From IMG/VR virus record IMGVR_UViG_3300023174_000039, positions 248,001 through 312,000 of that record: 64,000 nt of DNA; one strand, given 5' to 3'. A model generated the notes under the pieces. That model was not told where the DNA came from. It worked only from the letters and a program-made list of their open reading frames with translations, and did no database searches. Below are positions 1 through 26,993 of the stretch, one piece after another (the stretch's first letter is position 1; every line of letters begins with the position of its first letter). The translations under genes and the position numbers were made by a program.

Positions 1-703
1 CTAACTTGATCTCGGTAGCACCTGGTACTGTGTATGTTACACCACTTGCTGATTGGTACTGACTTGGGAAGTGATAAATGTAGGGTGGATCTAGCAGGTT
101 AGGGTGCCACGAATAATTAACAGAGTCAACTTTGATAGTAGCAGGAACTGACCAATTGTCTTTACAGGGCAATGTGGTCACTTGAAACGCATCCACCAAC
201 TTGATTTCAGTGGCACCAGGCACAGTGTATGTTACACCACTGGCTGATTGCCATTGATCTGGAAAGTGATAAATGTAAGGTGGTGCAAATGGATCAGGAT
301 GCCATGAATAATCCACGCTGGCAGTAGCGACACTGTCGGGTATGAACCAATGTTGGTTACAGGGCAATGTGGTCACTTGAAACGCATCCACCAACTTGAT
401 TTCAGTGGCGCCCGGAACGACATATGTTACCCCACTTGCGGGTTGCCATTGATCCGGGAAGTGATAAATGTAAGGCGGGTCTAGCGGGTTAGGATGCCAT
501 GAATAATCAACGGTGGACTTTGAGACAGAGTCTGGTATTAACCAATTGTCTTTACAGGGCAATGTGGTCACTTGAAACGCATCGATTAGTTTGATCTCAG
601 TGGCACCGGGCACAGTGTATGTTACACCACTGGCTGATTGATACTGGCTTGAAAAATGATAAATGTAAGGAGGATCCAATGGATCTGGGTGCCATGAATA
701 GTC
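1..703 (-). repeat. 195-bp coding tandem repeat, about 3.6 copies, plus one diverged copy extending to about 895
   Basis: The block agggcaatgtggtcacttgaaacgcatc recurs at 166, 361 and 556 (period 195 nt = 65 aa). Confidence 0.92.
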
Positions 704-1231
704 TACTCTGTCAAAGTTCACATGATTTGGGCATTTCCAATGTGCGTATTGTCGGGTTGCTTTAGCCTGTTGTGTATGTACCAGCTTGATACCCTGATTG
801 CCTGTGTACACAGGACCACCGGCGCTTTGCCATTGTGTGCCAAAGTGATATTCATATGCTGGTTCACGATAGTCCGGATGCCATGAAAAATCAAAACTAT
901 GTTGATCAATTCCTGCAGGAATCCGCCAGTTATCTACTGTAGACAATCTTGTGATAGTACGATCTACATGATAGTGTGTTTCAGTATAGCCCGCAGCAGG
1001 CACAAGATACACACCTGCATCTGCTTGATGTTGGCTAGGCCAGGCATGTCGCTGATGAGCTTGCCAAGGAACAGGCTCCCAAAGAAAATCCCACTCTCTA
1101 AGATCTGCTAAGTATGTGATCCACCAAAAGAACCTTGTGCGACTCAACTGCTGTGCATGCCCAATATCACTTGCTTCACGCTCATGAGCAAACAACCCTG
1201 GCTTCTTACCTGAATAAAAAATATCAAACAT
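2..1231 (-). CDS. Repeat-containing protein (Trp/His/Pro-rich 65-aa repeats), runs off the left edge; not in the ORF track
   Basis: Minus-strand frame from ATG at 1231 (in-frame TAA upstream at 1250-1252) reads MFDIFYSGKKPGLFAHEREASDIGHAQQLSRTRFFWWITYL... and stays open to the window edge. It contains repeats of DYSWHPxPxDPPYIYHFPxQxQSASGVTYTVPGATEIKL. Confidence 0.85.
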   Translation of the reverse strand, partial: MFDIFYSGKKPGLFAHEREASDIGHAQQLSRTRFFWWITYLADLREWDFLWEPVPWQAHQRHAWPSQHQADAGVYLVPAAGYTETHYHVDRTITRLSTVDNWRIPAGIDQHSFDFSWHPDYREPAYEYHFGTQWQSAGGPVYTGNQGIKLVHTQQAKATRQYAHWKCPNHVNFDRVDYSWHPDPLDPPYIYHFSSQYQSASGVTYTVPGATEIKLIDAFQVTTLPCKDNWLIPDSVSKSTVDYSWHPNPLDPPYIYHFPDQWQPASGVTYVVPGATEIKLVDAFQVTTLPCNQHWFIPDSVATASVDYSWHPDPFAPPYIYHFPDQWQSASGVTYTVPGATEIKLVDAFQVTTLPCKDNWSVPATIKVDSVNYSWHPNLLDPPYIYHFPSQYQSASGVTYTVPGATEIKL

Positions 1232-2336
1232 GATTAGAATAGACGAAATTTACAACAACACTTTTTGGCCCTGGATTAATAATCAAATCCCTGGCACTAG
1301 AACATACTTCTGTGATCCACCTGGCCGCAGTGATCCAGATGCATTGTTTAACTTTGGTCGAGATGACATTCCCGAAAACGATTTTGTGTTTTTCCATGAT
1401 CAAGAACCTGTGCATTTAGATCTTCATAGACCTTTGTTTACACAGGTCAGAGAGTACACCGAAGACATTAGAAAAAGCAACGGCGATGTCAAAAAAGGCG
1501 GGCATGTAATTGTCAGCGAGCATGGAGAATACGTGCGTGAGTTGTGTCGTGCATACGGATGGAAGAGCCATTATTACTTTTATCATGGATGGGCTTGCAA
1601 GGATTGGTTTCGAGGATATGATAAAACTTTCTTGATCCCTCGAGCAAAAGACAGAGCTCCTACACGCACATTTATGAGTCCTAATAGGATTGTTGCCGGC
1701 AAACGAGATCACAGAGTTTTGTTTTTGTATAATGTATTTAAGCACGGGCTAGATCAAAATTATATTTCGGCTCCTAGAATATGTCCTTACGAAAATGTAG
1801 ATATTTCACAGATAGCACTCAAGTATAATAACATATATCCTGACATAGAGCAAGTGTTCTTGGCAGCAGAATTGCCTAGATTGTTTGCCGGCGAAGACAC
1901 TCAGATCATGACCAGCTGTTGGTTGGGCAACTATGCAGAAGCACAAGACAGTTTGGTGTATGTTCCTACAGAGACTGTGTACTTTGGCAAACGATTACAC
2001 ATCACTGAGAAAACATTCAAGGCAATTGCCTTGGAAATGCCATTTGTGCTGGTAGCGCCTGCACACAGTTTGGAGTACATGCGCAGTTATGGATTCCAAA
2101 CATTTGATGGTATATTTGATGAGAGCTATGATCAGGAAACGGATGATAACAAACGTATTGAAAAAGTTACTCAGCTACTAAAAGATCTAGATAATTTATC
2201 CGTAGCAGAACGTCAACAGATACATCGTGCTTGCTTGCCCATTGTTCAACACAATTTTGAACACTTTTATGGCACCGGATTGGAAAACATCCTGTGGCCT
2301 GAACTGATCAACATGCTGAATGAACTTCGTAGCTGA
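1230..2336 (+). CDS. Glycosyltransferase-like protein, TEK family (GT10/fucosyltransferase-like C-terminal motif)
   Basis: PTETVYFGKRLHITEKTFKAI...PF...L...GFQTF...DESYD resembles the GT10 donor-binding ENxxxxxYxTEK motif; three paralogues in the window. Confidence 0.55.
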   Translation: MIRIDEIYNNTFWPWINNQIPGTRTYFCDPPGRSDPDALFNFGRDDIPENDFVFFHDQEPVHLDLHRPLFTQVREYTEDIRKSNGDVKKGGHVIVSEHGEYVRELCRAYGWKSHYYFYHGWACKDWFRGYDKTFLIPRAKDRAPTRTFMSPNRIVAGKRDHRVLFLYNVFKHGLDQNYISAPRICPYENVDISQIALKYNNIYPDIEQVFLAAELPRLFAGEDTQIMTSCWLGNYAEAQDSLVYVPTETVYFGKRLHITEKTFKAIALEMPFVLVAPAHSLEYMRSYGFQTFDGIFDESYDQETDDNKRIEKVTQLLKDLDNLSVAERQQIHRACLPIVQHNFEHFYGTGLENILWPELINMLNELRS

Positions 2337-3474
2337 TTCAATCATCAAAGGTCGGCCATACCCTGCACTGGCACAGCATCAAGCTATACCTTACACACAG
2401 GGCTGGAGAGAATTTGGAAAACATTGGCCACATACTACTCCTGCTGAGTTATTTGGACACATGAGTGATCATGGGTACCAGTATAGTTTGACCACAGAAG
2501 GCAACGGGTACTATGTAATTGGGCTGGGATTCTTTGATTTCACCATTGATTACTTTGCTCTTGTTGACCGTGCATTACTGCAAAGAATTCAGCAAAAGCT
2601 AGTGACTGTGCTGTTTTACTACCACGAAGGCGATAATCCGCACAACATCAAACAGCGTCTGGATTCATTATGCCAATTGCATGGATTGTCAACCGATTGC
2701 TATCGCTTTGTTAGCGGTAACACTGCTGCCAATTCAATCCCGGGCTTTGTGTACTTTCCTGATCATGAACTGTTGTTCTGGCGCAGGAATCAAGATGTAG
2801 CACCTGTTGTGTTGCACACTAACACAAGGCCATATACATTTGTCGCACTAAGCAGAACACACAAATGGTGGAGAGCAGCCATCATGGCAGACCTGTTACA
2901 AAGCAACATGCTGTCACAGAGTTTGTGGAGTTACAACACTGAGTTGCCACTGGGAGATGATCCTGCGGACAATCCCATAGAACAACTGCCCAATGTTGAT
3001 GTTGATGTGTTCATGACAAACGGACCATACAGATGTGACACATTAACAGTGGATGAACACAACAATCATGCATTAACAGTACCCGAGCATTACACGGATG
3101 CATATTTTAATGTTGTAGTAGAAACACACTTTGATGCTGACGGATCTGGTGGTGCTTTCCTAACTGAAAAAACATTCAAACCCATAAAGAATGCACAACC
3201 ATTTGTGCTGGTTGCACCAGCTGGTAGTTTACAATGCTTACGTGAGCTAGGATATCGTACATTTGATTCCGTGCTGGACAATAGCTACGATTTGGAAACA
3301 AACAACACTCAGCGTTGGCTCAAAGTAAAACAAACATTACAACAAATACAACAAGATCCACACGGCATTTTTTTACGCTGTCGTGATGATATACTGCACA
3401 ACCAGCAGTTATTTCAATCCACGAAACTGGACAGATTAAATACTTTACTAAAGAACCTATATGAACAAAATTAA
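2320..3474 (+). CDS. Glycosyltransferase-like protein, TEK family
   Basis: VVVETHFD...FLTEKTFKPI...PFV...LRELGYRTF...DNSYD; paralogue of 1230..2336. Confidence 0.55.
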   Translation: MNFVADSIIKGRPYPALAQHQAIPYTQGWREFGKHWPHTTPAELFGHMSDHGYQYSLTTEGNGYYVIGLGFFDFTIDYFALVDRALLQRIQQKLVTVLFYYHEGDNPHNIKQRLDSLCQLHGLSTDCYRFVSGNTAANSIPGFVYFPDHELLFWRRNQDVAPVVLHTNTRPYTFVALSRTHKWWRAAIMADLLQSNMLSQSLWSYNTELPLGDDPADNPIEQLPNVDVDVFMTNGPYRCDTLTVDEHNNHALTVPEHYTDAYFNVVVETHFDADGSGGAFLTEKTFKPIKNAQPFVLVAPAGSLQCLRELGYRTFDSVLDNSYDLETNNTQRWLKVKQTLQQIQQDPHGIFLRCRDDILHNQQLFQSTKLDRLNTLLKNLYEQN

Positions 3475-4486
3475 CTCCTACACCAGCTGGCAACCTCTTG
3501 AAGAGGTCATTGTGGGTCGCGCCTACTCACCTGATTACTTTGACTTTATTGACAATCCACAAGTGCGTAATCAACTGCAACAGATTCTCTACGAGACTGA
3601 AGAAGACTTGAACGGCCTACAACGAACCATTGAAAAGTATGGTGCTCGAGTACGTCGTCCTAACTTGCCCAGTAAAGACTCGTTTATTTGGCACCAAACA
3701 GAGGGCGGAGGTGCTCCGCTGCCGCCACTGACACCACGCGATTGGCAAATCACCATGGGCGACAAACTGTTGCGGGTGCTCAACATGGAAGAACTAGATG
3801 ACATCTGTGCCGACTTTGGCGATCAAGTTGTTAACCCTCACAAGAGTCGGTGGGACGAAGACTGTATCTTAAATGGTGCGAGTGCCAGCTGTATTGTGCG
3901 TGTGGGTCGCGATGTGTTCTTTGACAACTCAGATTTTTTACGTCCTGATCAAACCAAGTGGATTGTGGACAATGTGCTAGGAGAAGGGTATCGTGTTCAC
4001 GAAGCTATCACAGACGGTCATGGAGATGCTGTGTTTGCTATTCTCAAGCCCGGTGTGTTGCTATCCAGCAAACACGATGTGAACTTGGATCTGGCCAAAG
4101 ATTTTCCTGGCTGGGACGTTTGCAAGATCTGGGACAGTTCAATCTGGGCTGCCATGGAAGTGGGCAAGTTCAAATACGAGCAAACTCCTGGTGCTTGGTA
4201 TGTGCAAGGACAAACACCCACAGCTGAGTTCACAAAGTTTGTGGACACATATTTAAACAAGTGGACTGGCTTTGTGGCCGAAACTGTGTTTGATGTCAAC
4301 TGCCTGGTACTGGATGAAGAAAATGTTATCTTCAGCGCCTACAACCGAGAAGTGTTTGACTACTGTAAAAAACATCGTATCAATCCCATTATCAGTGAAC
4401 TGCGCCACAGCTACTTTTGGGACGGTGGCATCTCATGCTGTACACAAGATCTACGTCGTCGTGGCGGCCTAGAAGATTATCTATAA
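3461..4486 (+). CDS. Amidinotransferase (glycine/inosamine-phosphate amidinotransferase family)
   Basis: N-terminal NSYTSWQPLEEVIVGR, PRD motif, HGD (catalytic His), DVNCLVLDE, C-terminal GGISCCTQDLRR (catalytic Cys). Confidence 0.85.
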   Translation: MNKINSYTSWQPLEEVIVGRAYSPDYFDFIDNPQVRNQLQQILYETEEDLNGLQRTIEKYGARVRRPNLPSKDSFIWHQTEGGGAPLPPLTPRDWQITMGDKLLRVLNMEELDDICADFGDQVVNPHKSRWDEDCILNGASASCIVRVGRDVFFDNSDFLRPDQTKWIVDNVLGEGYRVHEAITDGHGDAVFAILKPGVLLSSKHDVNLDLAKDFPGWDVCKIWDSSIWAAMEVGKFKYEQTPGAWYVQGQTPTAEFTKFVDTYLNKWTGFVAETVFDVNCLVLDEENVIFSAYNREVFDYCKKHRINPIISELRHSYFWDGGISCCTQDLRRRGGLEDYL

Positions 4487-4508: not shown

Positions 4509-5177
4509 ATGAAAATATTGGTCAATGGCGACAGCAACATGTGCGGCGAAGAACTTGAAGACCGCAGTCTGGGTATATCATCACAGGTGGCCAAGATATT
4601 GGGTGCGGATATCAACAATCTTAGTCTCAGTGGCAGTAGCAATGATCGAATATACAACAGCACCATGGATTATGTTCTTAATCAGCCCACACCAGATCTG
4701 GTTCTGATTGGCTGGAGTGAAATGTGTCGTGTGCAATGGTTTTTGGATGATGTGCATCCGTTTGGTGAGTTTGTGGAAATAAACAACCTGGGTGTGGGAC
4801 GTCGTGAGTATCCAGACCATTATGCCAGGCGTCTAGAAAGATGGCACGAAATCAGCAACAATCTAGAATTTCGTACACATCTCAGTTACTACTGGCACGA
4901 ACGCATATATAACTTACACAAGTTTTTGCAAAACCGATGTATTAATCATTTGTTTTTTCATTCATTTCATGACTTCAAAGTAACTGATGCAAATGATCAG
5001 CTTGACTGGTCCAACTGTTTTATGGATCCTTACAGCTGGGACAACACCTATGTGCATTGGTGTGCAGATCAAGGATACAAAGAAATAACGCCTGGATGGT
5101 ATCATTATGAACCTGCGGGACAACGTGCGTGGGCCGAACGCATCGTTGAGTATATTAAACAACACAATATTATATGA
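4509..5177 (+). CDS. SGNH/GDSL hydrolase-like protein
   Basis: N-terminal ILVNGDS, NxSxSGSSN block, C-terminal HYEPAGQ. Confidence 0.65.
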   Translation: MKILVNGDSNMCGEELEDRSLGISSQVAKILGADINNLSLSGSSNDRIYNSTMDYVLNQPTPDLVLIGWSEMCRVQWFLDDVHPFGEFVEINNLGVGRREYPDHYARRLERWHEISNNLEFRTHLSYYWHERIYNLHKFLQNRCINHLFFHSFHDFKVTDANDQLDWSNCFMDPYSWDNTYVHWCADQGYKEITPGWYHYEPAGQRAWAERIVEYIKQHNII

Positions 5178-6289
5178 TTTATTCCGTTGACCAAATTCGA
5201 CATCTACATTTAGAAATAAGCAGTTTATGCAATGCCGCGTGTCCGTTGTGCCCTAGAAATTTCAATGGCTATAAACACAATGCAGGATACACAGAGCACA
5301 ACATGTCATTGGCAGAGGCACAAAAAATATTTCCCGTGGAGTTTGTGCAACAACTAGAGGTCATAGTGATCAATGGGAACTTTGGCGATGCTGTAATGAA
5401 TCCAGACACTGTGCCAATTGTTAGATATTTTAAAGAACACAATCCCAAGATACATATCAATATCAGCACCAATGGTGCCGCAAGAGATGCCAGATTCTGG
5501 AAAGACCTGGCAGCATCTGATGTTGAAGTGAGTTTTTGTATTGACGGCGTTGATGATTTCACGCACGGACTGTATCGACGCAACACAATGTACAGCACAA
5601 TCATGCGTAACTCTGCTACATTTATAGCTGCCGGAGGACGAGCTAACTGGAAGATGATTAAGTTTGATCATAATGGTCCATTTCAGGAACAGGCCCATCA
5701 GCTCAGCATACAAAGAGGATTCACGAATTTTTCACTGATCAACGACGGACGAGACATAGGACCTGTTTACAATGACCAAGGCGATTTACAATACACCATT
5801 GGAGAGGCACGGATCGATTGGCAGCCACCTGCAAGAATTGAACCGTTGTTAGAAATGAATTTTGATGAAAAATTCAAAGGTAATCAGATTATCTGGGTCA
5901 AGAAAGAAGAGATCAAAGAAATCCACTGTGAAGTTGCAGTATCAAAAAGTGTATATGTCAGCAGTACCGGAGATGTGTTCCCTTGTTGTTACATGGGCAT
6001 AAATCCTGCTGAATACAGAAACAATACCAGTCACGGATACAGCATGGAACAAATCAATCAGATTATGGCCAAGAACAATGCACTAGAGCACGATCTTGCC
6101 ACCTGTATTGCATGGTTTGATCACATTGAATCCAGCTGGAACAAAGACTCATTTGAGAATGGCAGATTACTGACCTGCAATCAATCATGCGGAGGCGACA
6201 ATCAGCGTCCGCAGTTTCATGTCAAAGAAGCCACAATATACTATAACGATGTTAACGGGTCCCAAACCCAGGATCAGGCCACCGACTAG
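5174..6289 (+). CDS. Radical SAM protein with C-terminal SPASM/twitch-like domain
   Basis: CNAACPLC (CxxxCxxC), STNG, C-terminal C...GDVFPCC...CNQSC. Confidence 0.9.
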   Translation: MIYSVDQIRHLHLEISSLCNAACPLCPRNFNGYKHNAGYTEHNMSLAEAQKIFPVEFVQQLEVIVINGNFGDAVMNPDTVPIVRYFKEHNPKIHINISTNGAARDARFWKDLAASDVEVSFCIDGVDDFTHGLYRRNTMYSTIMRNSATFIAAGGRANWKMIKFDHNGPFQEQAHQLSIQRGFTNFSLINDGRDIGPVYNDQGDLQYTIGEARIDWQPPARIEPLLEMNFDEKFKGNQIIWVKKEEIKEIHCEVAVSKSVYVSSTGDVFPCCYMGINPAEYRNNTSHGYSMEQINQIMAKNNALEHDLATCIAWFDHIESSWNKDSFENGRLLTCNQSCGGDNQRPQFHVKEATIYYNDVNGSQTQDQATD

Positions 6290-7061
6290 CATTTGGGTTC
6301 GGGGCATAAAAGTTTGTTAAATCAATGGGCCTTGATCCTGGCTCATAGTTTTGATATGTGTCAACTACCAGTGCGCTCATCATTCGATTGTTGTAAGAAC
6401 TAAAATGATTGCATCGACGGTCTTGTATCATGTAGTGCTTTATTATTTCTGCGTCAGTTCCTTTGCCCTCACTGAAACTCACATGAATCAATGGTGTTGT
6501 AAACACCACTCCGGGTAGCGCGGACTTGGAGATTTCTACTGTAAACGGATAGTTGTTAAAATGTATTTGTTTGATGTCTTTAAAAGTCCTGTCTATTTCG
6601 TGGAACCATTGCACTTGTGACCAATCTTGAAAAGAGTAATCAATCAAGTCTGCGGCCCAGGATTGTAGGGATTTTGCCAGCGTTGTTTTGTACTTGTACT
6701 TGGCATCATCTGAGTGCGGTTTCCAATCCAGGTTTAACATTTCATTTCCCACATCTCCATTTTCGCTATTGTACCTGGTGCTGTTGGTGTGACAAAATAC
6801 CATGAGTTCAATGGATTCAATCCATTCAGGATCATACTCCATATGATCAAATAGTTGTTTACGAGAATAATACCAACTGCGACCAGCAAATCCAAAACTG
6901 TACAAGTTCAACTCCAATGCCTCCGCAGTTAAATCCAGCCAACTCTTATTTTTTGGGTCAGAGTCTTTCTGCTGGGCCATCTTGTGCGGTATCACACTGT
7001 CCTCATTCCAACAACTGCAGAAACTGTCACCTACAAATACTATGTTTTTTTTAAATGGCAT
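6252..7061 (-). CDS. SGNH/GDSL hydrolase-like protein (probable start 7061, MPFKKNIVFVGDSF)
   Basis: VFVGDSF block, AGRS, C-terminal NHFS. The ATG at 7061 abuts the upstream gene's stop. Confidence 0.6.
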   Translation of the reverse strand: MPFKKNIVFVGDSFCSCWNEDSVIPHKMAQQKDSDPKNKSWLDLTAEALELNLYSFGFAGRSWYYSRKQLFDHMEYDPEWIESIELMVFCHTNSTRYNSENGDVGNEMLNLDWKPHSDDAKYKYKTTLAKSLQSWAADLIDYSFQDWSQVQWFHEIDRTFKDIKQIHFNNYPFTVEISKSALPGVVFTTPLIHVSFSEGKGTDAEIIKHYMIQDRRCNHFSSYNNRMMSALVVDTYQNYEPGSRPIDLTNFYAPNPNASRWPDPGFGTR

Positions 7062-8463
7062 TGTACCAGCCTGCCAATCTTGGGTAAGTTGCCGCAAAGT
7101 TTTTGCCTCGACGTTGATCGTATTGTTTAAAGAAGCTTTTGAAATCTTTTTGTAATGCCAATACGTTGGCTTCTTCAACATTGCCAGCAAACTCATCTGT
7201 TGTGTGCGCTATGTACTTTTCTTCATGGGGCGCAGTTACTTCCAGCAGATATTTTGAATAGCGTTCAATGTGGTCAATTTCAATATCTGCAAACAACTTT
7301 TTGATATCTGGACCCTTTAAGAAATCTGTAATTTCGTGTGCGTACTGCTCACGCAGTTCTCTAGGTAGTACTACTATGCTCTGAAATGTGGGGAAGCGCA
7401 CAGGATTAACGCTCAGCATGAGTCCACGACTGTGATTGCTATTGGGAGGTGCTGTGCGTTTGCGGTCTGCAAGCCAGTACAGGAACTCAGTAAATCCGTC
7501 GGCAGCGGCTGCACTCAGTGTGCCACATATGCCAGTATTGGCAATCACACCTGAGTTCAGTACCAGGTCTAGATTGCTGTTCCACAGTTCCCAGTCCAGC
7601 CCATCACGCACATACTCCATCTTGTTGCCTGTGCTTTCGGCACTAGTATATACCCATACAGGCACATCAATGCGACTGCATGCGTCTAAGAAACGTTTTA
7701 GTGTGTCTTGATCGTAGGCCAAGTTAGTGGTCATTTCTATACGACAATCAGTCTTGGAAGTGTTGTTGGCCAGCCAATCCAGTAACTTCCAGGTGTGACC
7801 TGACATCATTGGCTCGCCGCCACTGATTCGTATTTGTTTGATGGTTTTGTGCAGGCTAGAATCCCACCATTTAAAGAACGCATCGGCATAGGGGTTGTCC
7901 TCACCAAATGTATATCCTATTGCTTCGTCGCCAGTGGTTAGATAATGATTACGATGATCAGTTGGTAAATTTGTATAAGCACCGTTTTTGCGAATATCTT
8001 TAGCCCAGGTTGTGCTGATGGTTGGGGCACAATAACTGCATCCTAAATTGCAAGTGCGATCAAAACATATTTCCAAATAAGTCAGATCATAATCGTTTTC
8101 AGAACTGGAAGTGAACGCAGTGTTCAGCAACTCTGGACTCATTTGGCCACCCCAGGTGGTCCACACACGATCGCTGAGACCATCTGGTTCAACGTCTTCC
8201 ATTACCCAGCAGAATTGACAATTCTTGGGCTTGAGTCCCTGTTGCATCATGAGTCTCTCTTGTTTTTTAATGGGAGTATTGTGCAGGGCCATTGGGTTGG
8301 TCTTGATTGCTTCCAGGTCTATTAAATGTGGAGGATTATGGTGACAGCTTGTGGTCCATCCTTGGCTGAGCCATAGGCTGCTGTTGTACCATTTAGATCC
8401 ACAAAAACTTGGACTTTTAGAATCCAGGTTGTCAATCTTCCATTGTTTCATATTAATGCTCAT
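7051..8463 (-). CDS. Radical SAM protein with N-terminal twitch-like domain (subtype A)
   Basis: FCGSKW...SCHHNPPH...CQFCW, then CNLGCSYC, SGGEP, YVRDGLDW, C-terminal YDQRRGKNF. Confidence 0.9.
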   Translation of the reverse strand: MSINMKQWKIDNLDSKSPSFCGSKWYNSSLWLSQGWTTSCHHNPPHLIDLEAIKTNPMALHNTPIKKQERLMMQQGLKPKNCQFCWVMEDVEPDGLSDRVWTTWGGQMSPELLNTAFTSSSENDYDLTYLEICFDRTCNLGCSYCAPTISTTWAKDIRKNGAYTNLPTDHRNHYLTTGDEAIGYTFGEDNPYADAFFKWWDSSLHKTIKQIRISGGEPMMSGHTWKLLDWLANNTSKTDCRIEMTTNLAYDQDTLKRFLDACSRIDVPVWVYTSAESTGNKMEYVRDGLDWELWNSNLDLVLNSGVIANTGICGTLSAAAADGFTEFLYWLADRKRTAPPNSNHSRGLMLSVNPVRFPTFQSIVVLPRELREQYAHEITDFLKGPDIKKLFADIEIDHIERYSKYLLEVTAPHEEKYIAHTTDEFAGNVEEANVLALQKDFKSFFKQYDQRRGKNFAATYPRLAGWYNAI

Positions 8464-9110
8464 TGTATTCCTGTCAATTTATTTTTTAATACCGGGACAA
8501 TTACTTGATTGTAGTATCGTTGATGTCCGTCGTTGTTGGGATGGTCGCACACTGATGATTCTGCTTTGGTCCACTTGAAATCAGCAAAAGATAAAAACTG
8601 CGAATCACGCAGTCGATCAAGCACATGGTTATTCAGAGAAGGTATGTGTACAGGGTCAGGCATACACCAGAGAAAATCTGCACCCACCAGCTGGGCAGAA
8701 GCATATGCAGCCAACAATGTTGTGATTGAACTAGCATGCCCTATTCTATCACTGTACAAATATTTGTAGTAGTGTTCTACGGCTGTTTCAAGTTGAGGAA
8801 ATGTGCGATCTGACTGCCAGTTTGGGCCAATTGATTCGGCTGCATTTTCAGTGCGTCTGATTTGAATTCGAGCGGCAAACGACACACAACATATAACCAA
8901 TTTGATATCGTCGGTTAGTTCTTGATGTAATCGTTCCACAATAGATGCATTGCTGTAGCCTGGGCGGGAACGATTGTCCACTGTGACAGCAAACTCTTTT
9001 TGTATTAAACTAGGCCATGCATACTCACTTGGTTTAGCAATATAACCCATGGGGGTATCCGAGCATCCTTGACCAAAGGTAAAACTATCTCCTAATACCA
9101 CAATTTTCAT
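8460..9110 (-). CDS. SGNH/GDSL hydrolase-like protein
   Basis: LGDSFTFG, NRSRPGYSN, C-terminal DHPNNDGH. Confidence 0.75.
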   Translation of the reverse strand: MKIVVLGDSFTFGQGCSDTPMGYIAKPSEYAWPSLIQKEFAVTVDNRSRPGYSNASIVERLHQELTDDIKLVICCVSFAARIQIRRTENAAESIGPNWQSDRTFPQLETAVEHYYKYLYSDRIGHASSITTLLAAYASAQLVGADFLWCMPDPVHIPSLNNHVLDRLRDSQFLSFADFKWTKAESSVCDHPNNDGHQRYYNQVIVPVLKNKLTGIQ

Positions 9111-10586
9111 TTAGCTACAAACCTTTACATTGTACAACTGTTCAAATCTATCGGCATCAGCACGGTCATTTACCATGGGTTCTCCACGTATGTTTAGACT
9201 TGTGTTGAGCAACATGGCACAACCAGTTTCTTCATGCCAGGCTTCTAGTAGACGTCTGATCCCCGATCCGTCTGCGGGAACTGTTTGCACACGACTAGTG
9301 CCGTCATAATGAACGATAGCAGGAAATAAGTCACGATGCCTGCAACGAGCGATGACTTGCATATACCTACTGTTAGGGAAACCGCTAGGCATATCAAAAT
9401 AATTATGAACATGCTCCTCCAGAATAACTGGCGCAAATGGCCTGAATTGTTGTCTGCGTTTGATTGCATTTACACGTTCCTTTATGTCTGCCCCACGTGG
9501 GTCTGCCAATAATGATCTATTGCCCAAAGCCCTGGGACCAAATTCGGCACGACCACTGGCCACACCCACAATTTTATCCCGTAAAAGACCAGCCACGAGA
9601 TCGCCGACAGGATAGTGACCAGGGATATTGTGGCCCAAATAGGCATTGGTCCAATGTATCTGTTTCCTGTAAGCCAATGCTGCCGCACCAAGGCTACTGC
9701 CAGCATCGCCAGGACAAGGCATAATCCATATGTTATCAAAGTATTTTCCCAAGTTACGATTGGCACTACAGTTAAGAGCCACACCGCCCATGTACACTAA
9801 ATTGTTAGACCACGCAAAGTCACGTGCTCTACGCATTACATTATTGATCAACTGTTCTGCAATGCATTGAGCACCGGCAGCAATGTCATAATCTGACAGA
9901 TCTTTCAAGTATTTACGATCTATTCCTGTGTGTAGATTTTCACGGAATCTTATTTGATCTGAGTCTTTTACTAGTGTTTTCATACCAGTAGCCTGTGTGG
10001 CATCGCCATAGGCTGCCATGCCCATCAAGATGTATTCTTCGTCTAATGGGCGTAGGCCAACGCTGCCAGTAGCCGCAGAGTAGAACAGTCCAATTGAATG
10101 TGGATAACGTTGTGTCCAAAGTTTTCGATATGTTGCATAACCTTTTTGATCATATTCTGCTGCCCAGATTGTAATGGTATCAAATTCACCCACAGCATCA
10201 ATGACCACCACTGTGGCACGATTGTATGGCGAGGTTTGAAATCCTGCTGCCGCATGGCAAGCATGATGGTTGTGTGCGCTTGTGGTAGGTGAGCTCAGCA
10301 GAGCCCGAGGCACTTGTTGTTGTAGCACTTGATCAAGTGTGACTTTGTTCCACTCAATGCCTTGACCAGCATACCATTGTCGTAGTTGTTTAATCCAAGG
10401 ACGCTCGTAGTAGGCCACATGATCCACGCTATCAGTCAATGCATCCTCAATCAGTCCAGAGCAAATATCAGCGTCATTCTTGAGTTTTGAATAACGCTCA
10501 GAATGCCCGGCAAAAAGAATATCGCCCTGATGAATTACAGTAGCGGCAGCGTCGTGAAAACCTGCTGAAATTCCAAGTATTTTCAT
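9111..10586 (-). CDS. O-carbamoyltransferase (NodU/CmcH/TobZ family)
   Basis: HD, ERYSK, HHACHA, DAVGE, LMGMAAYG, GGVALNC, GDAG, EFGPRALGNRS, FRPFAP, RVQTV and LNTSLN..GEP motifs. Confidence 0.93.
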   Translation of the reverse strand: MKILGISAGFHDAAATVIHQGDILFAGHSERYSKLKNDADICSGLIEDALTDSVDHVAYYERPWIKQLRQWYAGQGIEWNKVTLDQVLQQQVPRALLSSPTTSAHNHHACHAAAGFQTSPYNRATVVVIDAVGEFDTITIWAAEYDQKGYATYRKLWTQRYPHSIGLFYSAATGSVGLRPLDEEYILMGMAAYGDATQATGMKTLVKDSDQIRFRENLHTGIDRKYLKDLSDYDIAAGAQCIAEQLINNVMRRARDFAWSNNLVYMGGVALNCSANRNLGKYFDNIWIMPCPGDAGSSLGAAALAYRKQIHWTNAYLGHNIPGHYPVGDLVAGLLRDKIVGVASGRAEFGPRALGNRSLLADPRGADIKERVNAIKRRQQFRPFAPVILEEHVHNYFDMPSGFPNSRYMQVIARCRHRDLFPAIVHYDGTSRVQTVPADGSGIRRLLEAWHEETGCAMLLNTSLNIRGEPMVNDRADADRFEQLYNVKVCS

Positions 10587-10684
10587 TTATAGATAAATGG
10601 ATCTCGTTTGCGTAGTTCTTTTAGTTTTTTGCGATAGCGAATTTCCATGCGAATTCTGTCAATTAAATTTCGAATCCATTTCAT
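10583..10684 (-). CDS. 33-aa basic protein ending RDPFIYK, coupled to the carbamoyltransferase; not in the ORF track
   Basis: MKWIRNLIDRIRMEIRYRKKLKELRKRDPFIYK; ATG one nt after the previous stop, and its TGA overlaps the next ATG (ATGA). Confidence 0.75.
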   Translation of the reverse strand: MKWIRNLIDRIRMEIRYRKKLKELRKRDPFIYK

Positions 10685-10685
10685 A

Positions 10686-11756
10686 TTAAGTTCCTTGTGT
10701 GATACACTGTACCTGACGATCACGAAAGTCAGCATCGCTCCAGTGATAGTTGTATATAGCACTAGAGCAACTGGTTGTTATTTTATACACATCTAAATAG
10801 TTATTTAACATGGACCAGATTGTGGCAGCATCTGTTGTGCCAAAACTCCGGATCAAATTCACTTGTGCCACTCTAGGATGGCCAATGGTGAGTGCTTTGT
10901 TTTCGGGGTCAAATCCATTGGCCACAAGCCATTCTCGGAACTGAGCCAGTTCTTTTATCTGCCACGGATAAGCGCCTGGATCTCTTGCCCACTCTATATC
11001 AAAGTCGCCGGCAGCTTCTGTTTGTGCTCGCAGTGTTGTGGTGGTCAATTCGTTTATGCGACTGTCGCGACCTTCATCATGGAACACTTCCCAATGATGT
11101 TTGCCCACTGCTTTGTTGACGCCCACATACACACCGCCTAGGCTGCGATTGATTGTTTCTATGCCAAACAGTTCATAATCTTCTGGCTGTAATTCGAATC
11201 TTGGTGCATTTAACCAACACATGAGTTGGCTGGGACGCACCCATTCAGGTGCATGTTGTGCCTTGCGCATGCTGAGCACAAGACTTTCATACTCGTGACA
11301 CAACAAGTTTAATTGACGAATGTGCCAACGTGTGGCAGCATCTGCGGCTGTGTAAAACGGACTCATTGCACCTGATACGCCTTGAAGGTCTTCAAAATAA
11401 CGGTGCAATCGATTTGTTTTGCTGTGTATGAGTTTGCCTCCAGGCAACCCATCGCCTACAGCACCTGCAGTAATGGTATTTGTGGTATCAAAATGATCTG
11501 TAATTTGATAGCCCATGTCCGCGGCATTGATGGCGGCAATTGACTGATTGATTTGATCACATATGTACTCTGCTGTTCTAGCACCTTGATGCCATCCAAA
11601 CCAACAGTAGTTCTTTTCTAAATGAAGATTGTTTTGTAATATATCATTCAGTGCCGCCAGCCAACGACGGCTAAGGCTGTGATCTTCTACATCTATGTAC
11701 ACTGGCAATAGGTCACCTGTGTGCATGTTTCTCAATGTTATTTCAATTTGTTCCAA
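10686..11756 (-). CDS. Hypothetical protein in the modification cluster
   Basis: 356-aa ORF tiling between neighbours; no family recognised. Confidence 0.75.
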   Translation of the reverse strand: MEQIEITLRNMHTGDLLPVYIDVEDHSLSRRWLAALNDILQNNLHLEKNYCWFGWHQGARTAEYICDQINQSIAAINAADMGYQITDHFDTTNTITAGAVGDGLPGGKLIHSKTNRLHRYFEDLQGVSGAMSPFYTAADAATRWHIRQLNLLCHEYESLVLSMRKAQHAPEWVRPSQLMCWLNAPRFELQPEDYELFGIETINRSLGGVYVGVNKAVGKHHWEVFHDEGRDSRINELTTTTLRAQTEAAGDFDIEWARDPGAYPWQIKELAQFREWLVANGFDPENKALTIGHPRVAQVNLIRSFGTTDAATIWSMLNNYLDVYKITTSCSSAIYNYHWSDADFRDRQVQCITQGT

Positions 11757-13056
11757 TTTGATCCCACCATTCTTTGACGTCAGTCCGTGCGCTCAATATC
11801 TTTGCCATATCAGTAGGCGCTGTGCGTATGCTTTCTAATTTTAACACACGAGCATGGCCTTTTGCAAGCCCTGCACGATAAGTATCTGGCCATTGTTCCT
11901 CAAACGTTGGTCTAGACTGTAGTTGCAACAACATGTCACGCATGACTTGTGTGCGGCATTGCGGCACTAGATCGTTTATCCAGGAATTCAGCAACGGTCT
12001 GGGCAGAGCCAATGGGCTCATTACAATATCTGGACCAAAGCTGAATATCACCTTGGCCAGCAATTCTACCCCATATTCTTCTGCAAGTTGTTCCACTGCT
12101 AGTATTTCTGTCATGCCCGGCAAGGTCAGCGTAAAGTCCAGGCGCATTTGTCTGCGGTTCTGCTGTATGGCTACGCCTTGTGCAAAGTTGTTTCTGAACT
12201 GTTCGTAGTCAAGTCCTGTGCGGATGTATTCTCCTGTGGCTCCTGTTCCGTCAAGACTGGCGCATATCTGCCAGTCGCGGATACAAGCCAAAATATCCCG
12301 ATATAGATTACAGCCCCTATAGTCAACGCGACTAAGATTGGTATTATACCTTGCATATACTCTACCTCCATCTCCTAATTCCACTATTCTTTTCATGTAG
12401 CGCCAGTGCTGTTCGTACATGAGTGGCTCGCCGCCTACCCAGTATATTTCTTCTACTCTGTGTTCTTCTACTGCTTGTGCAAACTCCGCTTCGATCTGTT
12501 GGTCTTGAAAAGCACTTATTTGAGTTCTTATTTCTGGACGCATCCAATTGTTCTTGGGATTTGACCAGTCTGTCATTTCATTTTGTTTTTGTTCTGTTTC
12601 CCACGCACTGCTCAACATATCGCCACAGGTTCTGCATTTAAAATTGCACAGGTTTGAAAAACGATAATCCCAGCTTACAGGCTTCATTGTTGTGTAGCCA
12701 GTGGCGTCTGTTGTGGCTGCTATGTCTTCGTACTTGTGCTTGAACAAATGCCAGAAGTAGGTTCTGTACACATCTGTGTTCAACAGCTTTGAATTGCATA
12801 CATCACACTCAGGCAAAGTTTCACCGGCCAACATGCGACGACGCACTGATCGCATGTGATCACTGTTCCAATGCTGTTCCAAGGTAATGGGAATGTACCG
12901 GCCTGTGCCTGCCGCAGTGTCTATGTACTGTTCAAAACTCTGTGCTGGTTCTCTAGAGGCACAGCACATTCTTCGTTCAGTTTGGGGGCTTAGGTATGTG
13001 TGCGTCCATGGGGCCATACACAATGATTCGGGTTTATTTTGACTCTGCATATGCAA
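11743..13056 (-). CDS. Radical SAM protein with N-terminal twitch-like domain (subtype B)
   Basis: LCMAPWTH...MCC...CDVC, CNFKCRTC, GGEP, YNTN, EYIRTG. Confidence 0.9.
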   Translation of the reverse strand: MHMQSQNKPESLCMAPWTHTYLSPQTERRMCCASREPAQSFEQYIDTAAGTGRYIPITLEQHWNSDHMRSVRRRMLAGETLPECDVCNSKLLNTDVYRTYFWHLFKHKYEDIAATTDATGYTTMKPVSWDYRFSNLCNFKCRTCGDMLSSAWETEQKQNEMTDWSNPKNNWMRPEIRTQISAFQDQQIEAEFAQAVEEHRVEEIYWVGGEPLMYEQHWRYMKRIVELGDGGRVYARYNTNLSRVDYRGCNLYRDILACIRDWQICASLDGTGATGEYIRTGLDYEQFRNNFAQGVAIQQNRRQMRLDFTLTLPGMTEILAVEQLAEEYGVELLAKVIFSFGPDIVMSPLALPRPLLNSWINDLVPQCRTQVMRDMLLQLQSRPTFEEQWPDTYRAGLAKGHARVLKLESIRTAPTDMAKILSARTDVKEWWDQIGTN

Positions 13057-13981
13057 TTATGGGATTTATTATTTCATTTATTATCCGAGACTCTGCCAAA
13101 TTATGATCATAAAATCGATTGTGATTGTGTTCTAACTTTTGTAATGTCAATTGGTCGTGAGGTACTGGATCAAAATTCTTTACGGTACTGACCAATGCTG
13201 TCAATCTCTCGGTGTAATCACTGATATTATCATAACTTTCGTCAAATAGATTGTCAAATGTTTCAAATCCCTGGGACTGGAGATATTTTAAATGTCCCGC
13301 TTGTGCCATTACCACAAAAGGATGATAAAAAGCCATGGGTTTAAATGTCTTTTCTGTGACAAATATTTCAGGAGCATCCACAAGTGTTTCTGCCACTATG
13401 CTAAAATATGTGCTATCATACCAGTCTGGGTTGAAGTGTCGCTGAAAGTTTACATCATTCATATCATTGTCATTGGGCAAGGTTCTACCATGCATGGTAT
13501 AACTCCATACCAGTTGATCTAGTATTTCTGCCAAGTGCACCACCAATGCGTCGCGATGCTGCCGCCGCTGACGCATCGGCAGCAGTGCCAGTTTTTGATA
13601 GGTCCTATTAGGTTGATAACCGGACCAGTTGGCTTTGTTTAGGCTGGCTTCATTGTACCAAAACCAATTCTGATTGTGCAAAACAAAACAATTCTCTACT
13701 GGGTCAGGGAATTTATGCATTATCTGTGGTGACTCCCATAAATTATCTAATACAATTTTATAAGAATCATTGAGGTACGGTCTATACCAGTCTGTATAAT
13801 ACCAGGCTGAAGAACTGGAGTGTCTAAGAGCATTTGCAACTAACACATGATCATTGCGGTTATAATCAACACCCTCTTGCCAATTTACTATATCAAAATA
13901 TGGTTCTACCAATCTCTGTAGTAGTACTTGATGAAATGATGTCCTGTCATCCTGGTTGATTAATAATTTAAGTCGCGGCAT
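13034..13981 (-). CDS. Glycosyltransferase-like protein, TEK family
   Basis: FSIVAET...FVTEKTFKPM...PFVV...GFETF...DESYD. Confidence 0.55.
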   Translation of the reverse strand: MPRLKLLINQDDRTSFHQVLLQRLVEPYFDIVNWQEGVDYNRNDHVLVANALRHSSSSAWYYTDWYRPYLNDSYKIVLDNLWESPQIMHKFPDPVENCFVLHNQNWFWYNEASLNKANWSGYQPNRTYQKLALLPMRQRRQHRDALVVHLAEILDQLVWSYTMHGRTLPNDNDMNDVNFQRHFNPDWYDSTYFSIVAETLVDAPEIFVTEKTFKPMAFYHPFVVMAQAGHLKYLQSQGFETFDNLFDESYDNISDYTERLTALVSTVKNFDPVPHDQLTLQKLEHNHNRFYDHNLAESRIINEIINPIIAYAESK

Positions 13982-23390: not shown

Positions 23391-23396
23391 AGTGAT

Positions 23397-23425
23397 AGTA
23401 TACGCTGGTTTTAGATAAAAGTAAA
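23397..23425 (-). promoter_or_regulatory. Sigma70-type promoter TTTACT-N17-TATACT, probably giving a leaderless transcript
   Basis: Minus strand reads tttact tttatctaaaaccagcg tatact atcact ATG(23390). Confidence 0.6.
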
Positions 23426-23442: not shown

Positions 23443-23460
23443 TGGTAAACAAGTTTGCTA

Positions 23461-26990: not shown

Positions 26991-26993
26991 GTG

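What the first reader, a model, noticed from the sequence alone, without database searches (positions are those of the whole stretch)
1..900. 65-aa Trp/His/Pro-rich repeat protein inside the enzyme cluster: carrier, scaffold or RiPP-like substrate?
Seen: at least 3.6 near-identical 195-bp units and a diverged fifth. Each has a constant DYSWHP-x-P-x-DPPYIYHF core and a variable linker. High DNA identity suggests recent expansion. Inference: it is either an aromatic sugar-binding module array or a repeated substrate for the radical SAM enzymes. SPASM/twitch enzymes are known to cross-link W/Y/H in peptides.
Basis: partly seen in the sequence, partly recalled or inferred. Interest (0 to 1): 0.6.

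Follow-up and report, generated by a model that had tools for sequence, protein, structure and literature searches.

The report
Repeat-bearing phage glycosyltransferase-like giant protein
The repeats are the first part of a 2047-residue protein of a jumbo phage, in which 21 folded 65-residue modules link sugar-transferase-like domains; it belongs to a large, unnamed, phage-only family that sits in a conserved sugar and radical-SAM gene cassette beside the tail genes, and it is most likely an enzyme arm, not a peptide substrate.

Summary
The repeat is real but lies on the minus strand, and the window shows only its start. The gene (window 1-1231, running on upstream of the window) encodes 2047 residues. 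It has a small GT-A-like N-terminal domain, 21 tandem ~65-aa units, then three GT-A-fold domains, the last of which is highly conserved.

The units are not near-identical: DNA identity is 57-82%, dS about 1.3 and dN/dS 0.17. They are old copies under purifying selection.

AlphaFold models are confident (pLDDT 93), so the units are folded beta modules. They are homologous to the second half of the protein's own GT-A-like domains.

The repeat profile finds only 185 clusters among 1.84 billion representatives, with 0 to about 25 units. Nearly all full-length members end in the conserved GT-A-like domain.

Relatives lie on 528 viral contigs. The 80 examined share neighbours: sugar aminotransferase, carbamoyltransferase, N-terminal-twitch radical SAM paralogues and a DXD-bearing GT-A paralogue, downstream of baseplate and giant fibre-like genes.

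Best reading: a cytoplasmic multi-domain glycosyltransferase-like protein whose repeats act as a spacer or acceptor-binding arm. The RiPP-like substrate reading is unlikely but not excluded. Transferase activity and repeat function are inferred, not shown.

The parts
1..1231 (-). 5' part (residues 1-410) of the 2047-aa repeat protein gene. The whole gene is G000:C1:243088-249231, minus strand, so 4912 bases lie upstream of the window.
   Evidence: ORF list and translation; window placement.
896..1231 (-). N-terminal domain (residues 1-112): a minimal GT-A / nucleotide-diphospho-sugar-transferase-like fold. Its second half (residues 47-111, window 899-1093) is a cryptic 'unit 0' of the repeat.
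707..895 (-). Repeat unit 1 (residues 113-175), the diverged 'fifth' unit of the finding.
   Evidence: 21-35% protein identity to units 2-10.
512..706 (-). Repeat unit 2 (residues 176-240).
317..511 (-). Repeat unit 3 (residues 241-305).
122..316 (-). Repeat unit 4 (residues 306-370).
1..121 (-). First 40 residues of repeat unit 5. Units 5-21 and the three C-terminal GT-A-fold domains (residues about 1468-1598, 1594-1725 and 1813-1957) lie outside the window.
1230..4486 (+). Three divergently transcribed ORFs (1230-2336, 2320-3474, 3461-4486) with no Pfam family. The first two belong to a four-member paralogue family, with 13034-13981 and 17767-18891. The start codon of 1230-2336 overlaps the repeat gene's start codon by 2 nt.
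   Evidence: The ORF at 1230-2336 has a counterpart in 67-68 of 80 related loci. The GT10 lead is weak only.
4509..6289 (+). DUF6071-like ORF (4509-5177) and a radical SAM enzyme with a C-terminal SPASM domain (5174-6289). These are not conserved partners.
   Evidence: the radical SAM is below every NCBIfam cut-off and found in 6 of 80 loci.
7051..20260 (-). Array on the same strand as the repeat gene: six N-terminal-twitch radical SAM paralogues (7051-8463, 11743-13050, 13968-15191, 15188-16477, 16449-17801, 18875-20260), a GDSL-like hydrolase (8460-9110), a carbamoyltransferase (9111-10586) and conserved unknowns (10686-11726, 13034-13981, 17767-18891).
   Evidence: Pfam; NF033640 at 260-405 bits against a cut-off of 170; paralogy; conservation in related loci.
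20260..21192 (-). 310-aa stand-alone paralogue of the repeat protein's last GT-A-like domain. It carries D-G-D where the repeat protein has an invariant A-K.
   Evidence: hhalign probability 99%, E 8.8e-18, with alignment shown; BLASTP.
21173..45271 (-). Upstream structural context: small conserved ORFs and virion-structural-like proteins (21173-26825), a 4936-aa FG-GAP giant protein (26994-41804) and a baseplate wedge subunit (41804-45271).
   Evidence: Pfam and PHROGs; collinear with locus L089 of a relative; nearest isolates are Atu_ph07, CBB and XbC2.

Best explanation
The repeats are part of a large cytoplasmic, multi-domain, glycosyltransferase-like protein of an uncultured jumbo myovirus.

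Architecture:
- a small GT-A-like N-terminal domain;
- 21 tandem ~65-residue beta-rich modules, which arose by amplifying the second (acceptor-side) half of that GT-A-like domain;
- two further GT-A-fold domains;
- a highly conserved terminal GT-A-fold domain followed by a helical tail.

Proposed role (inferred):
- The protein works with the neighbouring genes, which are nucleotide-sugar enzymes (dehydratase/epimerase, DegT aminotransferase), a carbamoyltransferase, a GDSL enzyme, six N-terminal-twitch radical SAM paralogues and a DXD-bearing GT-A paralogue.
- Together they would build or attach an unusual, heavily tailored glycan.
- The likely target is a virion surface or fibre component made from the adjacent baseplate and giant-protein module.
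- The repeats are not a substrate. They would be a rigid, length-variable arm (0 to about 25 units in relatives) that spaces the catalytic end from the N-terminal domain, or holds a long acceptor (glycan chain or fibrous protein).
- The radical SAM enzymes would tailor the sugars.

Shown: the gene structure, the fold class, the homology of the unit to the GT-A-like half-domain, purifying selection, restriction of the family to phages, copy-number variation and the conserved neighbourhood.

Inferred: transferase activity, the glycan, its target and the arm or binding role.
For: - Full gene and unit map.
- AlphaFold2 models: residues 1279-2047 at pLDDT 92.6, pTM 0.75; residues 1-435 at pLDDT 92.7, pTM 0.78. 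The units are therefore folded and packed in a defined way.
- Foldseek on the C-terminal model finds tandem GT-A enzymes: K4CP chondroitin polymerase at E 3.7e-6, then LH3, Mimivirus R699, WrtF, ArnC, PmHS2 and LARGE1. It also finds phage and giant-virus glycosyltransferases.
- The unit HMM hits the N-terminal half-domain (i-E 8e-9) and the start of each C-terminal module at i-E about 1e-4. hhalign of units against a module gives E 1.2e-5.
- The paralogue at window 20260-21192 aligns to the last domain (99%, E 9e-18) and has a canonical D-G-D at the DXD position.
- Context: an NAD epimerase/dehydratase and a DegT aminotransferase lie convergent with the gene; carbamoyltransferase, GDSL and radical SAMs are nearby.
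- Conservation: aminotransferase in 74 of 80 loci, carbamoyltransferase in 70 of 80, and hits to the twitch radical SAM paralogues in 48-65 of 80, or 41-60 for the best-kept ones when each ORF is assigned to its closest window gene.
- Family size: more than 4530 proteins (90% clusters) and 528 IMG/VR contigs.
- Length ranges from 742 to 2109 aa in steps of about 65 aa.
- The repeat is found only in 185 clusters of 1.84 billion, and nearly every representative of 450 aa or more ends in the last domain; those that do not look like fragments.
- A shorter architecture (3-4 units plus the last domain only) keeps the same linkage to radical SAM genes and to a giant protein.
- dN/dS is 0.17 among units 2-9.
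- There is no N-terminal signal-like or membrane segment in the sequence (read directly).
Against: - No sequence-level membership in any glycosyltransferase family: Pfam, PHROGs, NCBIfam and PDB sequence searches were all empty.
- The GT-A fold is shared with nucleotidyltransferases (IspD, MobA, cytidylyltransferases), which score about as well. The chemistry is therefore not fixed.
- The conserved last domain lacks DXD and has an invariant A-K instead. It could be metal-independent, or a non-catalytic binding domain.
- The repeat unit alone was not folded and searched as a single domain. No structural analogue was found in the five-unit model, so a binding role has no precedent to lean on.
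- No glycan, target or expression data exist.
- Giant-protein length does not track unit number in the three cases seen: 4936 aa with 21 units, 5463 aa with 3 units and 3925 aa with 4 units. This speaks against a simple ruler matched to that protein.
Confidence: 0.5

Rival explanations
1. RiPP-like or protein-substrate reading: the units are repeated substrates. Their invariant Trp, or other aromatic residues, would be cross-linked or otherwise modified by the neighbouring radical SAM enzymes.
For: - Radical SAM genes are linked to this family in two different architectures. In L089 a radical SAM gene overlaps the start of the repeat gene by 11 nt.
- Each unit has an invariant S/T-W-x-P and several conserved Tyr/Phe residues.
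- The array of six paralogous enzymes has no assigned substrate.
Against: - The units are confidently folded domains (pLDDT >90), and homologous to part of a GT-A-like domain.
- The protein is 2047 aa, with no leader/core organisation.
- No peptidase, exporter or RRE-type domain was found in the ORFs scanned.
- His is variable.
- The enzymes fall in NF033640 and reach no peptide-maturase cut-off.
- Family members with few or no free units still exist.
- Radical SAM counts within 10-kb flanks do not rise with unit number (Spearman -0.44, though confounded by the flank limit).
- Sugar-nucleotide enzymes in the cassette give the radical SAMs a more ordinary substrate.
Confidence: 0.1
2. Structural fibre or adhesin: the protein is itself a virion appendage encoded in the tail module. 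The repeats would form the shaft, and the GT-A-like domains (with DXD lost) would act as sugar-binding receptor heads rather than enzymes.
For: - The gene lies in the block downstream of the baseplate wedge, the giant FG-GAP protein and virion-structural-like proteins.
- Copy number varies as it does in phage fibres and decoration proteins.
- The last domain has A-K in place of DXD.
- A glycosyltransferase fold used for binding has precedent: vaccinia H3 appears among the fold matches.
Against: - The last domain has very many invariant polar residues, as expected for an active site.
- The gene is embedded among sugar-biosynthesis enzymes rather than between fibre genes, and in this genome it is 25 kb from the giant protein.
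- No similarity to any known fibre, Ig-like or decoration domain was found.
- No virion proteome is available.
Confidence: 0.15
3. Glycan carrier: the repeats are themselves the acceptors. The protein would glycosylate its own Ser/Thr-rich linkers, or be glycosylated by the cassette, acting as a mucin-like carrier.
For: - The linkers of units 2-9 are Ser/Thr-rich (for example SVSKST, SVATAS, TVVESS) and evolve faster than the core: dN/dS 0.46 against 0.09.
- Several transferase-like proteins are encoded nearby.
Against: - The Ser/Thr richness is confined to the lineage-specific units 2-9. It is weak in units 11-21, which are the ones with positional orthologues in relatives.
- No conserved acceptor sequon was seen across the family.
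Confidence: 0.1
4. The cassette makes a small molecule (for example an aminoglycoside-like compound) or a DNA hypermodification. The protein would be a nucleotidyl- or glycosyl-transferase of that pathway, with the repeats merely structural.
For: - DegT-type aminotransferase, carbamoyltransferase and twitch-type radical SAM enzymes also occur in aminoglycoside pathways (my own knowledge of BtrN, TobZ and GenS-type enzymes; not tested here).
- A cyanophage paper calls a similar aminotransferase/radical SAM trio 'antibiotic synthesis genes' of unclear role (PMC12801897).
- ThyX lies 2.3 kb from the gene's 3' end.
- The GT-A fold matches nucleotidyltransferases equally well.
Against: - ThyX is present in only 26 of 80 related loci.
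- No DNA-modification hallmark genes were seen in the ORFs scanned.
- The position downstream of tail genes is conserved.
- A 0-25 unit arm is hard to rationalise for a small-molecule enzyme.
Confidence: 0.1

Closest known systems
Tandem GT-A glycosyltransferases: E. coli K4 chondroitin polymerase K4CP (PDB 2z86), Pasteurella heparosan synthase PmHS2, LARGE1, human LH3 and Mimivirus R699
   Same: Several GT-A-fold domains in one chain. These are the best Foldseek matches to the C-terminal 580 residues (E 4e-6 to 1e-3, probability 0.57-0.99). Viral multi-GT proteins match likewise.
   Different: Sequence identity is only 8-12%, and no Pfam or CAZy-type family is detectable. The conserved last domain has no DXD. 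None of these enzymes carries an array of 65-aa modules derived from half of a GT-A domain.
Single-domain GT-A enzymes (SpsA, WrtF fucosyltransferase, B4GALNT1, TarS) and nucleotidyltransferases of the same superfold (IspD, MobA, glucose-1-phosphate cytidylyltransferase)
   Different: The fold alone does not separate sugar transfer from nucleotidyl transfer. The signature here (F-D-F/Y-S-W-x-P ... H-x-F) is not one I know from those families.
Virus-encoded glycosylation cassettes: chlorovirus PBCV-1 capsid glycosylation (A64R), Mimivirus fibril glycans, mycobacteriophage virion glycosylation
   Same: Virus-encoded nucleotide-sugar enzymes plus transferases placed with structural genes. PBCV-1 A64R is among the weak fold matches of the N-terminal domain. 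Virion glycosylation of phages is documented in Freeman et al. 2023, cited in PMC12801897.
   Different: None of those systems, to my knowledge, combines six N-terminal-twitch radical SAM paralogues, a carbamoyltransferase and a repeat-bearing transferase. No glycan has been shown here.
Multi-core RiPP precursors modified by radical SAM/SPASM enzymes (cyclophane-forming triceptides, sactipeptides, ranthipeptides)
   Different: Here the repeats are folded 65-aa domains inside a 2047-aa enzyme-like protein. The radical SAMs belong to another family (NF033640) and reach no peptide-maturase cut-off. There is no leader, protease or exporter.
Hypervariable tail-fibre region of marine T4-like myophages carrying glycosyltransferases and radical SAM cassettes
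   Same: Zaragoza-Solas et al. 2020 (PMC7029224) describe glycosyltransferases and radical SAM gene cassettes in the tail-fibre hypervariable region. Nishimura et al. 2017 (PMC5332604) note a T4-like viral genome with 12 radical SAM genes. The genomic setting is the same kind.
   Different: Those papers do not describe this protein family, its repeat or the conserved cassette. They propose host O-antigen modification without a test.

Membership tests
GT-A fold nucleotide-diphospho-sugar transferase superfamily | Rossmann-like alpha/beta/alpha GT-A fold | tested here: met
GT-A fold nucleotide-diphospho-sugar transferase superfamily | DXD (or equivalent) metal- and diphosphate-binding motif at the end of beta-4 | tested here: not met
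   In the conserved last domain this position is an invariant A-K (F-A-K-L-E-V). The stand-alone paralogue at window 20260-21192 has D-G-D there. Domains 1 and 2 have E-N-D and x-C-D, which are not clear DXD motifs.
GT-A fold nucleotide-diphospho-sugar transferase superfamily | Sequence membership in a curated glycosyltransferase family (Pfam PF00535 and relatives) | tested here: not met
   No Pfam hit for the whole protein. Only 2 of 68 last-domain sequences touch PF00535, at E 0.15. A PDB profile search was empty.
GT-A fold nucleotide-diphospho-sugar transferase superfamily | Transfer of a sugar from a nucleotide donor | not testable with these tools
   Needs an enzyme assay.
Tandem or bifunctional GT-A polymerases (K4CP, PmHS2, LARGE1) | Two or more GT-A domains in one polypeptide | tested here: met
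   Domains at residues about 1468-1598, 1594-1725 and 1813-1957, plus the N-terminal half-domain.
Tandem or bifunctional GT-A polymerases (K4CP, PmHS2, LARGE1) | Two catalytically competent sites that alternate to make a repeating polymer | not testable with these tools
   All three domains are well conserved, but competence cannot be read from sequence.
RiPP precursor for radical SAM/SPASM maturases | Short precursor with a leader and unstructured core peptide(s) | tested here: not met
   The protein is 2047 aa and the units are modelled as folded domains at pLDDT >90.
RiPP precursor for radical SAM/SPASM maturases | Adjacent maturase of a peptide-modifying radical SAM family, usually with a recognition (RRE) domain | tested here: not met
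   Six neighbours are NF033640 N-terminal-twitch proteins. Hits to PapB, YhhB, StsB, WgkB and similar families are far below their cut-offs. The SPASM enzyme at 5174-6289 is in 6 of 80 loci. RRE was not searched for with a dedicated tool.
RiPP precursor for radical SAM/SPASM maturases | Conserved modifiable residues in every repeat | tested here: inconclusive
   Trp5 and Pro7 are invariant and Tyr/Phe conserved, but His is variable. The same residues are conserved in the GT-A-like modules, so a structural role explains them.
RiPP precursor for radical SAM/SPASM maturases | Leader peptidase and/or exporter in the cluster | tested here: not met
   None was found by Pfam in the 20 ORFs of window 1230-24435 that were scanned. 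The DUF2201 metallopeptidase-like/VWA protein about 10.5 kb upstream of the window start (G000 236214-237509) is a different kind.
RiPP precursor for radical SAM/SPASM maturases | Observed mass change after co-expression | not testable with these tools
   Needs mass spectrometry.
Carbohydrate-binding module arrays | Match to a known CBM or lectin family by sequence or fold | tested here: not met
   No Pfam hit. Foldseek on the five-unit model gives nothing at E <0.2 and nothing over the units. The Atlas returns only viral hypothetical proteins. The single unit was not folded and searched alone, so a known fold is not excluded.
Carbohydrate-binding module arrays | Glycan binding | not testable with these tools
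   Needs glycan arrays or calorimetry on the isolated repeat region.

The most novel reading that the evidence does not exclude
The family would be a new class of phage glycan-assembly enzyme. An internally amplified half-GT-A module forms a rigid arm of 0 to about 25 units that sets the reach or chain length of a glycan. The sugars of that glycan are tailored by an array of N-terminal-twitch radical SAM enzymes, and it decorates the giant fibre-like protein of aquatic jumbo myoviruses. This would give a function both to the unexplained radical SAM cassettes of marine and freshwater myophages and to an unnamed family of several thousand proteins. An even bolder variant, not excluded, is that the radical SAM enzymes act on the invariant Trp of each unit.
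Probability: 0.2. Interest if true: 0.8.

Novelty: new variant of a known kind. Interest (0 to 1): 0.55.

Why it matters
- Aquatic large myophages are known to carry many radical SAM and glycosyltransferase genes near their tail-fibre genes, with no assigned role (PMC7029224, PMC5332604).
- This locus shows these genes form a conserved cassette, seen in the 80 related loci examined out of 528 viral contigs that carry a relative.
- The cassette is centred on an unnamed, phage-only protein family: more than 4500 sequence clusters and no Pfam family.
- The family's signature is a length-variable array of modules derived from half of a GT-A domain.
- If the cassette makes a virion glycan, it would add a new kind of virus-encoded glycosylation, and a natural system for asking how a repeat arm controls a transferase.
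- It also gives the NF033640 radical SAM family a testable context.
- If the repeats turn out to be only a spacer, this is an ordinary, though new, domain family.

Tried and rejected
- Pfam, PHROGs and PDB sequence searches of the whole protein gave nothing usable. A profile of the last domain against PDB sequences and Pfam also gave nothing.
- tblastn against 50,697 phage records: the N-terminal 760 residues had no match. The C-terminal part matched only Ralstonia phage RsoM2USA ORF348, which is the last domain alone, at 28% identity.
- The Atlas feature search of five units among named clusters gave no usable hit. The Atlas fold search returned only viral hypothetical proteins.
- Foldseek and VIA-align on the model of the N-terminal domain plus five units matched only the N-terminal domain. 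I therefore do not claim the unit has a new fold.
- The correlation of unit number with radical SAM count in 51 loci gave Spearman -0.44. Longer genes push neighbours out of the 10-kb flank, so it is no evidence either way.
- Literature searches for the cassette, for NF033640 and for N-terminal twitch enzymes found no description.
No read-level check of the array and no habitat or expression data were obtained, and read laying was not used.
- A genome-contig scan found 4 loci, all on MAG contigs (Haliscomenobacter, Legionellales, Fischerella). I take these for binned phage contigs, not cellular homologues.
- Complex prediction was not used. I make no specific binding claim that a pair test could settle.
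- 'Recent expansion' was considered and rejected on dS of about 1.3.
- A simple ruler matched to the giant protein was considered and set aside on three anecdotal cases.
Full report
**1. What is in the sequence**

The window is bases 248001-312000 of a 331,654-bp viral record (CheckV completeness 95%, GC 44%).

Tandem Repeats Finder reports one array at window 3-700: period 195 bp, 3.6 copies, 75% matches. The coding strand is minus. The ORF at window 2-1231 runs off the window start.

Fetching the flanking DNA (L007) shows a single 2047-codon ORF, G000 243088-249231. The finding therefore saw only residues 1-410.

Anchoring on the F/V-D-Y-S-W motif gives 21 tandem units of 62-68 residues, covering residues 113-1478. 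Three more copies of the motif sit inside larger C-terminal domains. Nowhere else in the phage genome does the motif occur, in any frame.

**2. The units are old, selected and folded**

- Units 2-10 share 57-82% DNA identity and 49-84% protein identity. Unit 1 is far more diverged.
- Among units 2-9, mean dS is 1.3 (saturated) and mean dN is 0.21. The ratio is 0.09 in the 44-residue core and 0.46 in the linker.
- So the array is not a recent expansion. It is kept by purifying selection on the protein.
- Units 11-21 have positional orthologues in relatives (for example unit 18 with L026 unit 14, 78%; unit 20 with L079 unit 21, 76%). Units 2-9 are mostly closer to each other than to units of other phages. 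One relative has two units that are 97% identical.
- The N-proximal part of the array is therefore the zone that grows and shrinks.
- Across 38 units from four proteins only Trp5 and Pro7 are invariant.
- AlphaFold2 with family alignments gives pLDDT 92.7 and pTM 0.78 for residues 1-435, and pLDDT 92.6 and pTM 0.75 for residues 1279-2047. Each unit is modelled as a small beta-rich module.
- The high pTM of a six-module chain suggests fixed packing between units. This is an inference, as I could not inspect coordinates.

**3. What the rest of the protein is**

- Foldseek on the C-terminal model finds multi-domain GT-A glycosyltransferases: K4CP chondroitin polymerase at E 3.7e-6, then LH3, Mimivirus R699, WrtF, ArnC, PmHS2 and LARGE1. 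Among viral models it finds glycosyltransferases of phages and giant viruses.
- Nucleotidyltransferases of the same superfold score similarly, so the fold does not fix the chemistry.
- A profile of the 21 units also hits residues 47-111 of the N-terminal domain over its full length (i-E 8e-9), and the first 20 or so positions of each C-terminal module at i-E about 1e-4. hhalign of units against a module gives E 1.2e-5.
- The unit is thus an amplified copy of the second half of the protein's own GT-A-like module. That half follows the DXD position and, in GT-A enzymes generally, faces the acceptor (established knowledge).
- No Pfam, PHROG, NCBIfam or PDB sequence match exists for any part.
- The 310-aa protein at window 20260-21192 is a paralogue of the last domain (hhalign 99%, E 9e-18). 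It carries D-G-D exactly where the repeat protein has an invariant A-K.
- That supports the GT-A assignment. It also shows the big protein's last domain is either metal-independent or not catalytic.

**4. The family**

- The C-terminal 648 residues find more than 4530 proteins (90% clusters). All are unnamed and without Pfam domains. Their lengths fall in steps of about 65-68 aa.
- 528 IMG/VR contigs encode relatives. In the best 80, the protein is 742-2109 aa long.
- The unit profile, run against 1.84 billion representative proteins, finds only 185 clusters, with up to 25 matched stretches (22 units at 20 bits or more). Nearly every representative of 450 aa or more ends in the conserved last domain. 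Those that do not look like fragments, and some members have no free unit at all.
- A second architecture of 493-578 aa has 3-4 units plus only the last domain.
- Ralstonia phage RsoM2USA has the last domain alone, the only match among 50,697 deposited phage genomes.
- Among one genome for each of 185,579 prokaryote species, only four MAG contigs match.
- The repeat is therefore a phage-only accessory of this one enzyme-like domain.

**5. Neighbourhood**

- Convergent with the gene's 3' end lie an NAD-dependent sugar epimerase/dehydratase and a DegT/DnrJ/EryC1 aminotransferase.
- On the other side come three unknown ORFs, a DUF6071-like ORF and a radical SAM/SPASM gene, all on the plus strand.
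- Then, on the same strand as the repeat gene, come six paralogous radical SAM genes, a GDSL-like gene, a carbamoyltransferase, three unknown ORFs and the DXD paralogue.
- The six radical SAMs are all NF033640, N-terminal-twitch proteins, at 260-405 bits against a cut-off of 170. None reaches the cut-off of a peptide-maturase family.
- In the 80 related loci (44-69% identity in the family protein), the counterparts found within 10-kb flanks are:

| Gene | Loci with a counterpart (of 80) |
|---|---|
| DegT aminotransferase | 74 |
| Carbamoyltransferase | 70 |
| ORF 1230-2336 | 67-68 |
| Individual twitch radical SAM paralogues | 48-65 by any hit; 41-60 for the best-kept ones when each ORF is assigned to its closest window gene |
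| SPASM enzyme at 5174-6289 | 6 |

- Further along the minus strand lie virion-structural-like proteins, a 4936-aa FG-GAP protein and a baseplate wedge subunit. The nearest cultured relatives of the baseplate wedge are Atu_ph07, CBB and XbC2, at 33-35% identity.
- A relative with the short architecture (L089) is collinear: giant protein, eight conserved genes, the DXD paralogue, two radical SAM genes, then the repeat protein. The repeat protein's start overlaps the preceding radical SAM gene by 11 nt.
- The link between this family and radical SAM genes, downstream of the tail module, is thus conserved across two architectures.

**6. Interpretation**

The best-supported reading is a cytoplasmic, multi-domain glycosyltransferase-like protein. 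It would act in a phage cassette that makes and attaches a tailored sugar or glycan, probably onto a virion surface component.

In this reading the repeats are a rigid, length-variable arm or acceptor-holding array, and the radical SAM enzymes act on sugars.

The shown steps are the architecture, fold class, internal homology, selection, distribution and synteny. The inferred steps are activity, product, target and the role of the arm.

The substrate (RiPP-like) reading is disfavoured by the folded nature and origin of the units, the enzyme families, the variable His and the lack of leader, protease and exporter. The conserved, even overlapping, placement of radical SAM genes keeps it alive at about 0.1.

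The other rivals are:
- a structural fibre or adhesin whose GT-A-like domains only bind sugars;
- a self-glycosylated carrier;
- a small-molecule or DNA-modification pathway.

**7. Novelty and score**

The fold class is known. The family, its signature motif, the half-domain repeat and the conserved cassette are, as far as these searches and the literature library show, undescribed.

Earlier papers only note radical SAM and glycosyltransferase genes in myophage hypervariable regions.

I rate it a new variant of a known kind, with interest 0.55.

**8. Limits**

- No coordinates of the models could be inspected.
- The single unit was not folded alone.
- No reads, expression or habitat data were obtained.
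- Neighbourhood counts are limited to 10-kb flanks, and paralogues cross-hit.
- All functional statements rest on predicted structures and gene context.

Noticed in passing
window 1229-1232: The start codons of the repeat gene (minus strand, CAT at 1229-1231) and of the divergent ORF 1230-2336 (plus strand, ATG at 1230-1232) overlap by two bases. The two divergent genes have no intergenic space, so each promoter must lie inside the other gene. The plus-strand block 1230-6289 looks like an insertion into an otherwise minus-strand operon.
   Followed up: partly
window 1230-2336, 2320-3474, 13034-13981, 17767-18891: Four paralogous proteins (27-41% identity over their conserved C-terminal portions, about 95-220 aligned residues) have no Pfam, PHROG, NCBIfam or PDB sequence match. 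Two of them each follow a twitch radical SAM gene. The Atlas gives only a weak lead (score 0.79) to GT10 fucosyltransferase-like viral proteins.
   Followed up: partly
window 7051-20260: Six paralogous radical SAM proteins of NCBIfam NF033640 (auxiliary-cluster twitch/SPASM-like domain at the N-terminus) sit in one array. Among deposited phage genomes only Vibrio phages K566 and K567 and Ralstonia phage RsoM2USA have detectable relatives. I found no paper describing the family's function.
   Followed up: partly
window 26994-41804 (minus strand): A 4936-residue ORF whose only family hit is FG-GAP repeats lies directly downstream of a baseplate wedge gene (41804-45271). Relatives carry giant proteins of 5463 and 3925 aa in the same place.
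   Followed up: partly
L091 and L092 (Haliscomenobacter sp. MAG contigs of 183 kb and 148 kb); L093 (Legionellales MAG); L094 (Fischerella MAG): The only 'cellular' genomes with the family are MAG contigs. They are probably jumbo-phage contigs binned into bacterial MAGs, and might hint at hosts.
   Followed up: no
L007 214-1509 and 4073-4744 (G000 236214-237509 and 240073-240744): A DUF2201 metallopeptidase-like/VWA protein (present in 62 of 80 related loci) and a ThyX thymidylate synthase (26 of 80) lie upstream of the sugar genes. The first appears to travel with the cassette.
   Followed up: no
window 6252-7196 (minus strand): A 314-codon ORF overlaps the end of the SPASM gene (5174-6289) by 38 bases and the twitch radical SAM gene (7051-8463) by 146 bases, with no family hit. 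It is unclear whether it is a real gene.
   Followed up: no
L089 12953-17532: The relative with the short architecture carries a porin-like gene, a PstS-like phosphate-binding protein gene and a GT2 glycosyltransferase next to the cassette. The GT2, a metallophosphatase and a BPL_N-like gene have 61-77% identical homologues elsewhere in this phage (G000 about 94-96 kb).
   Followed up: no
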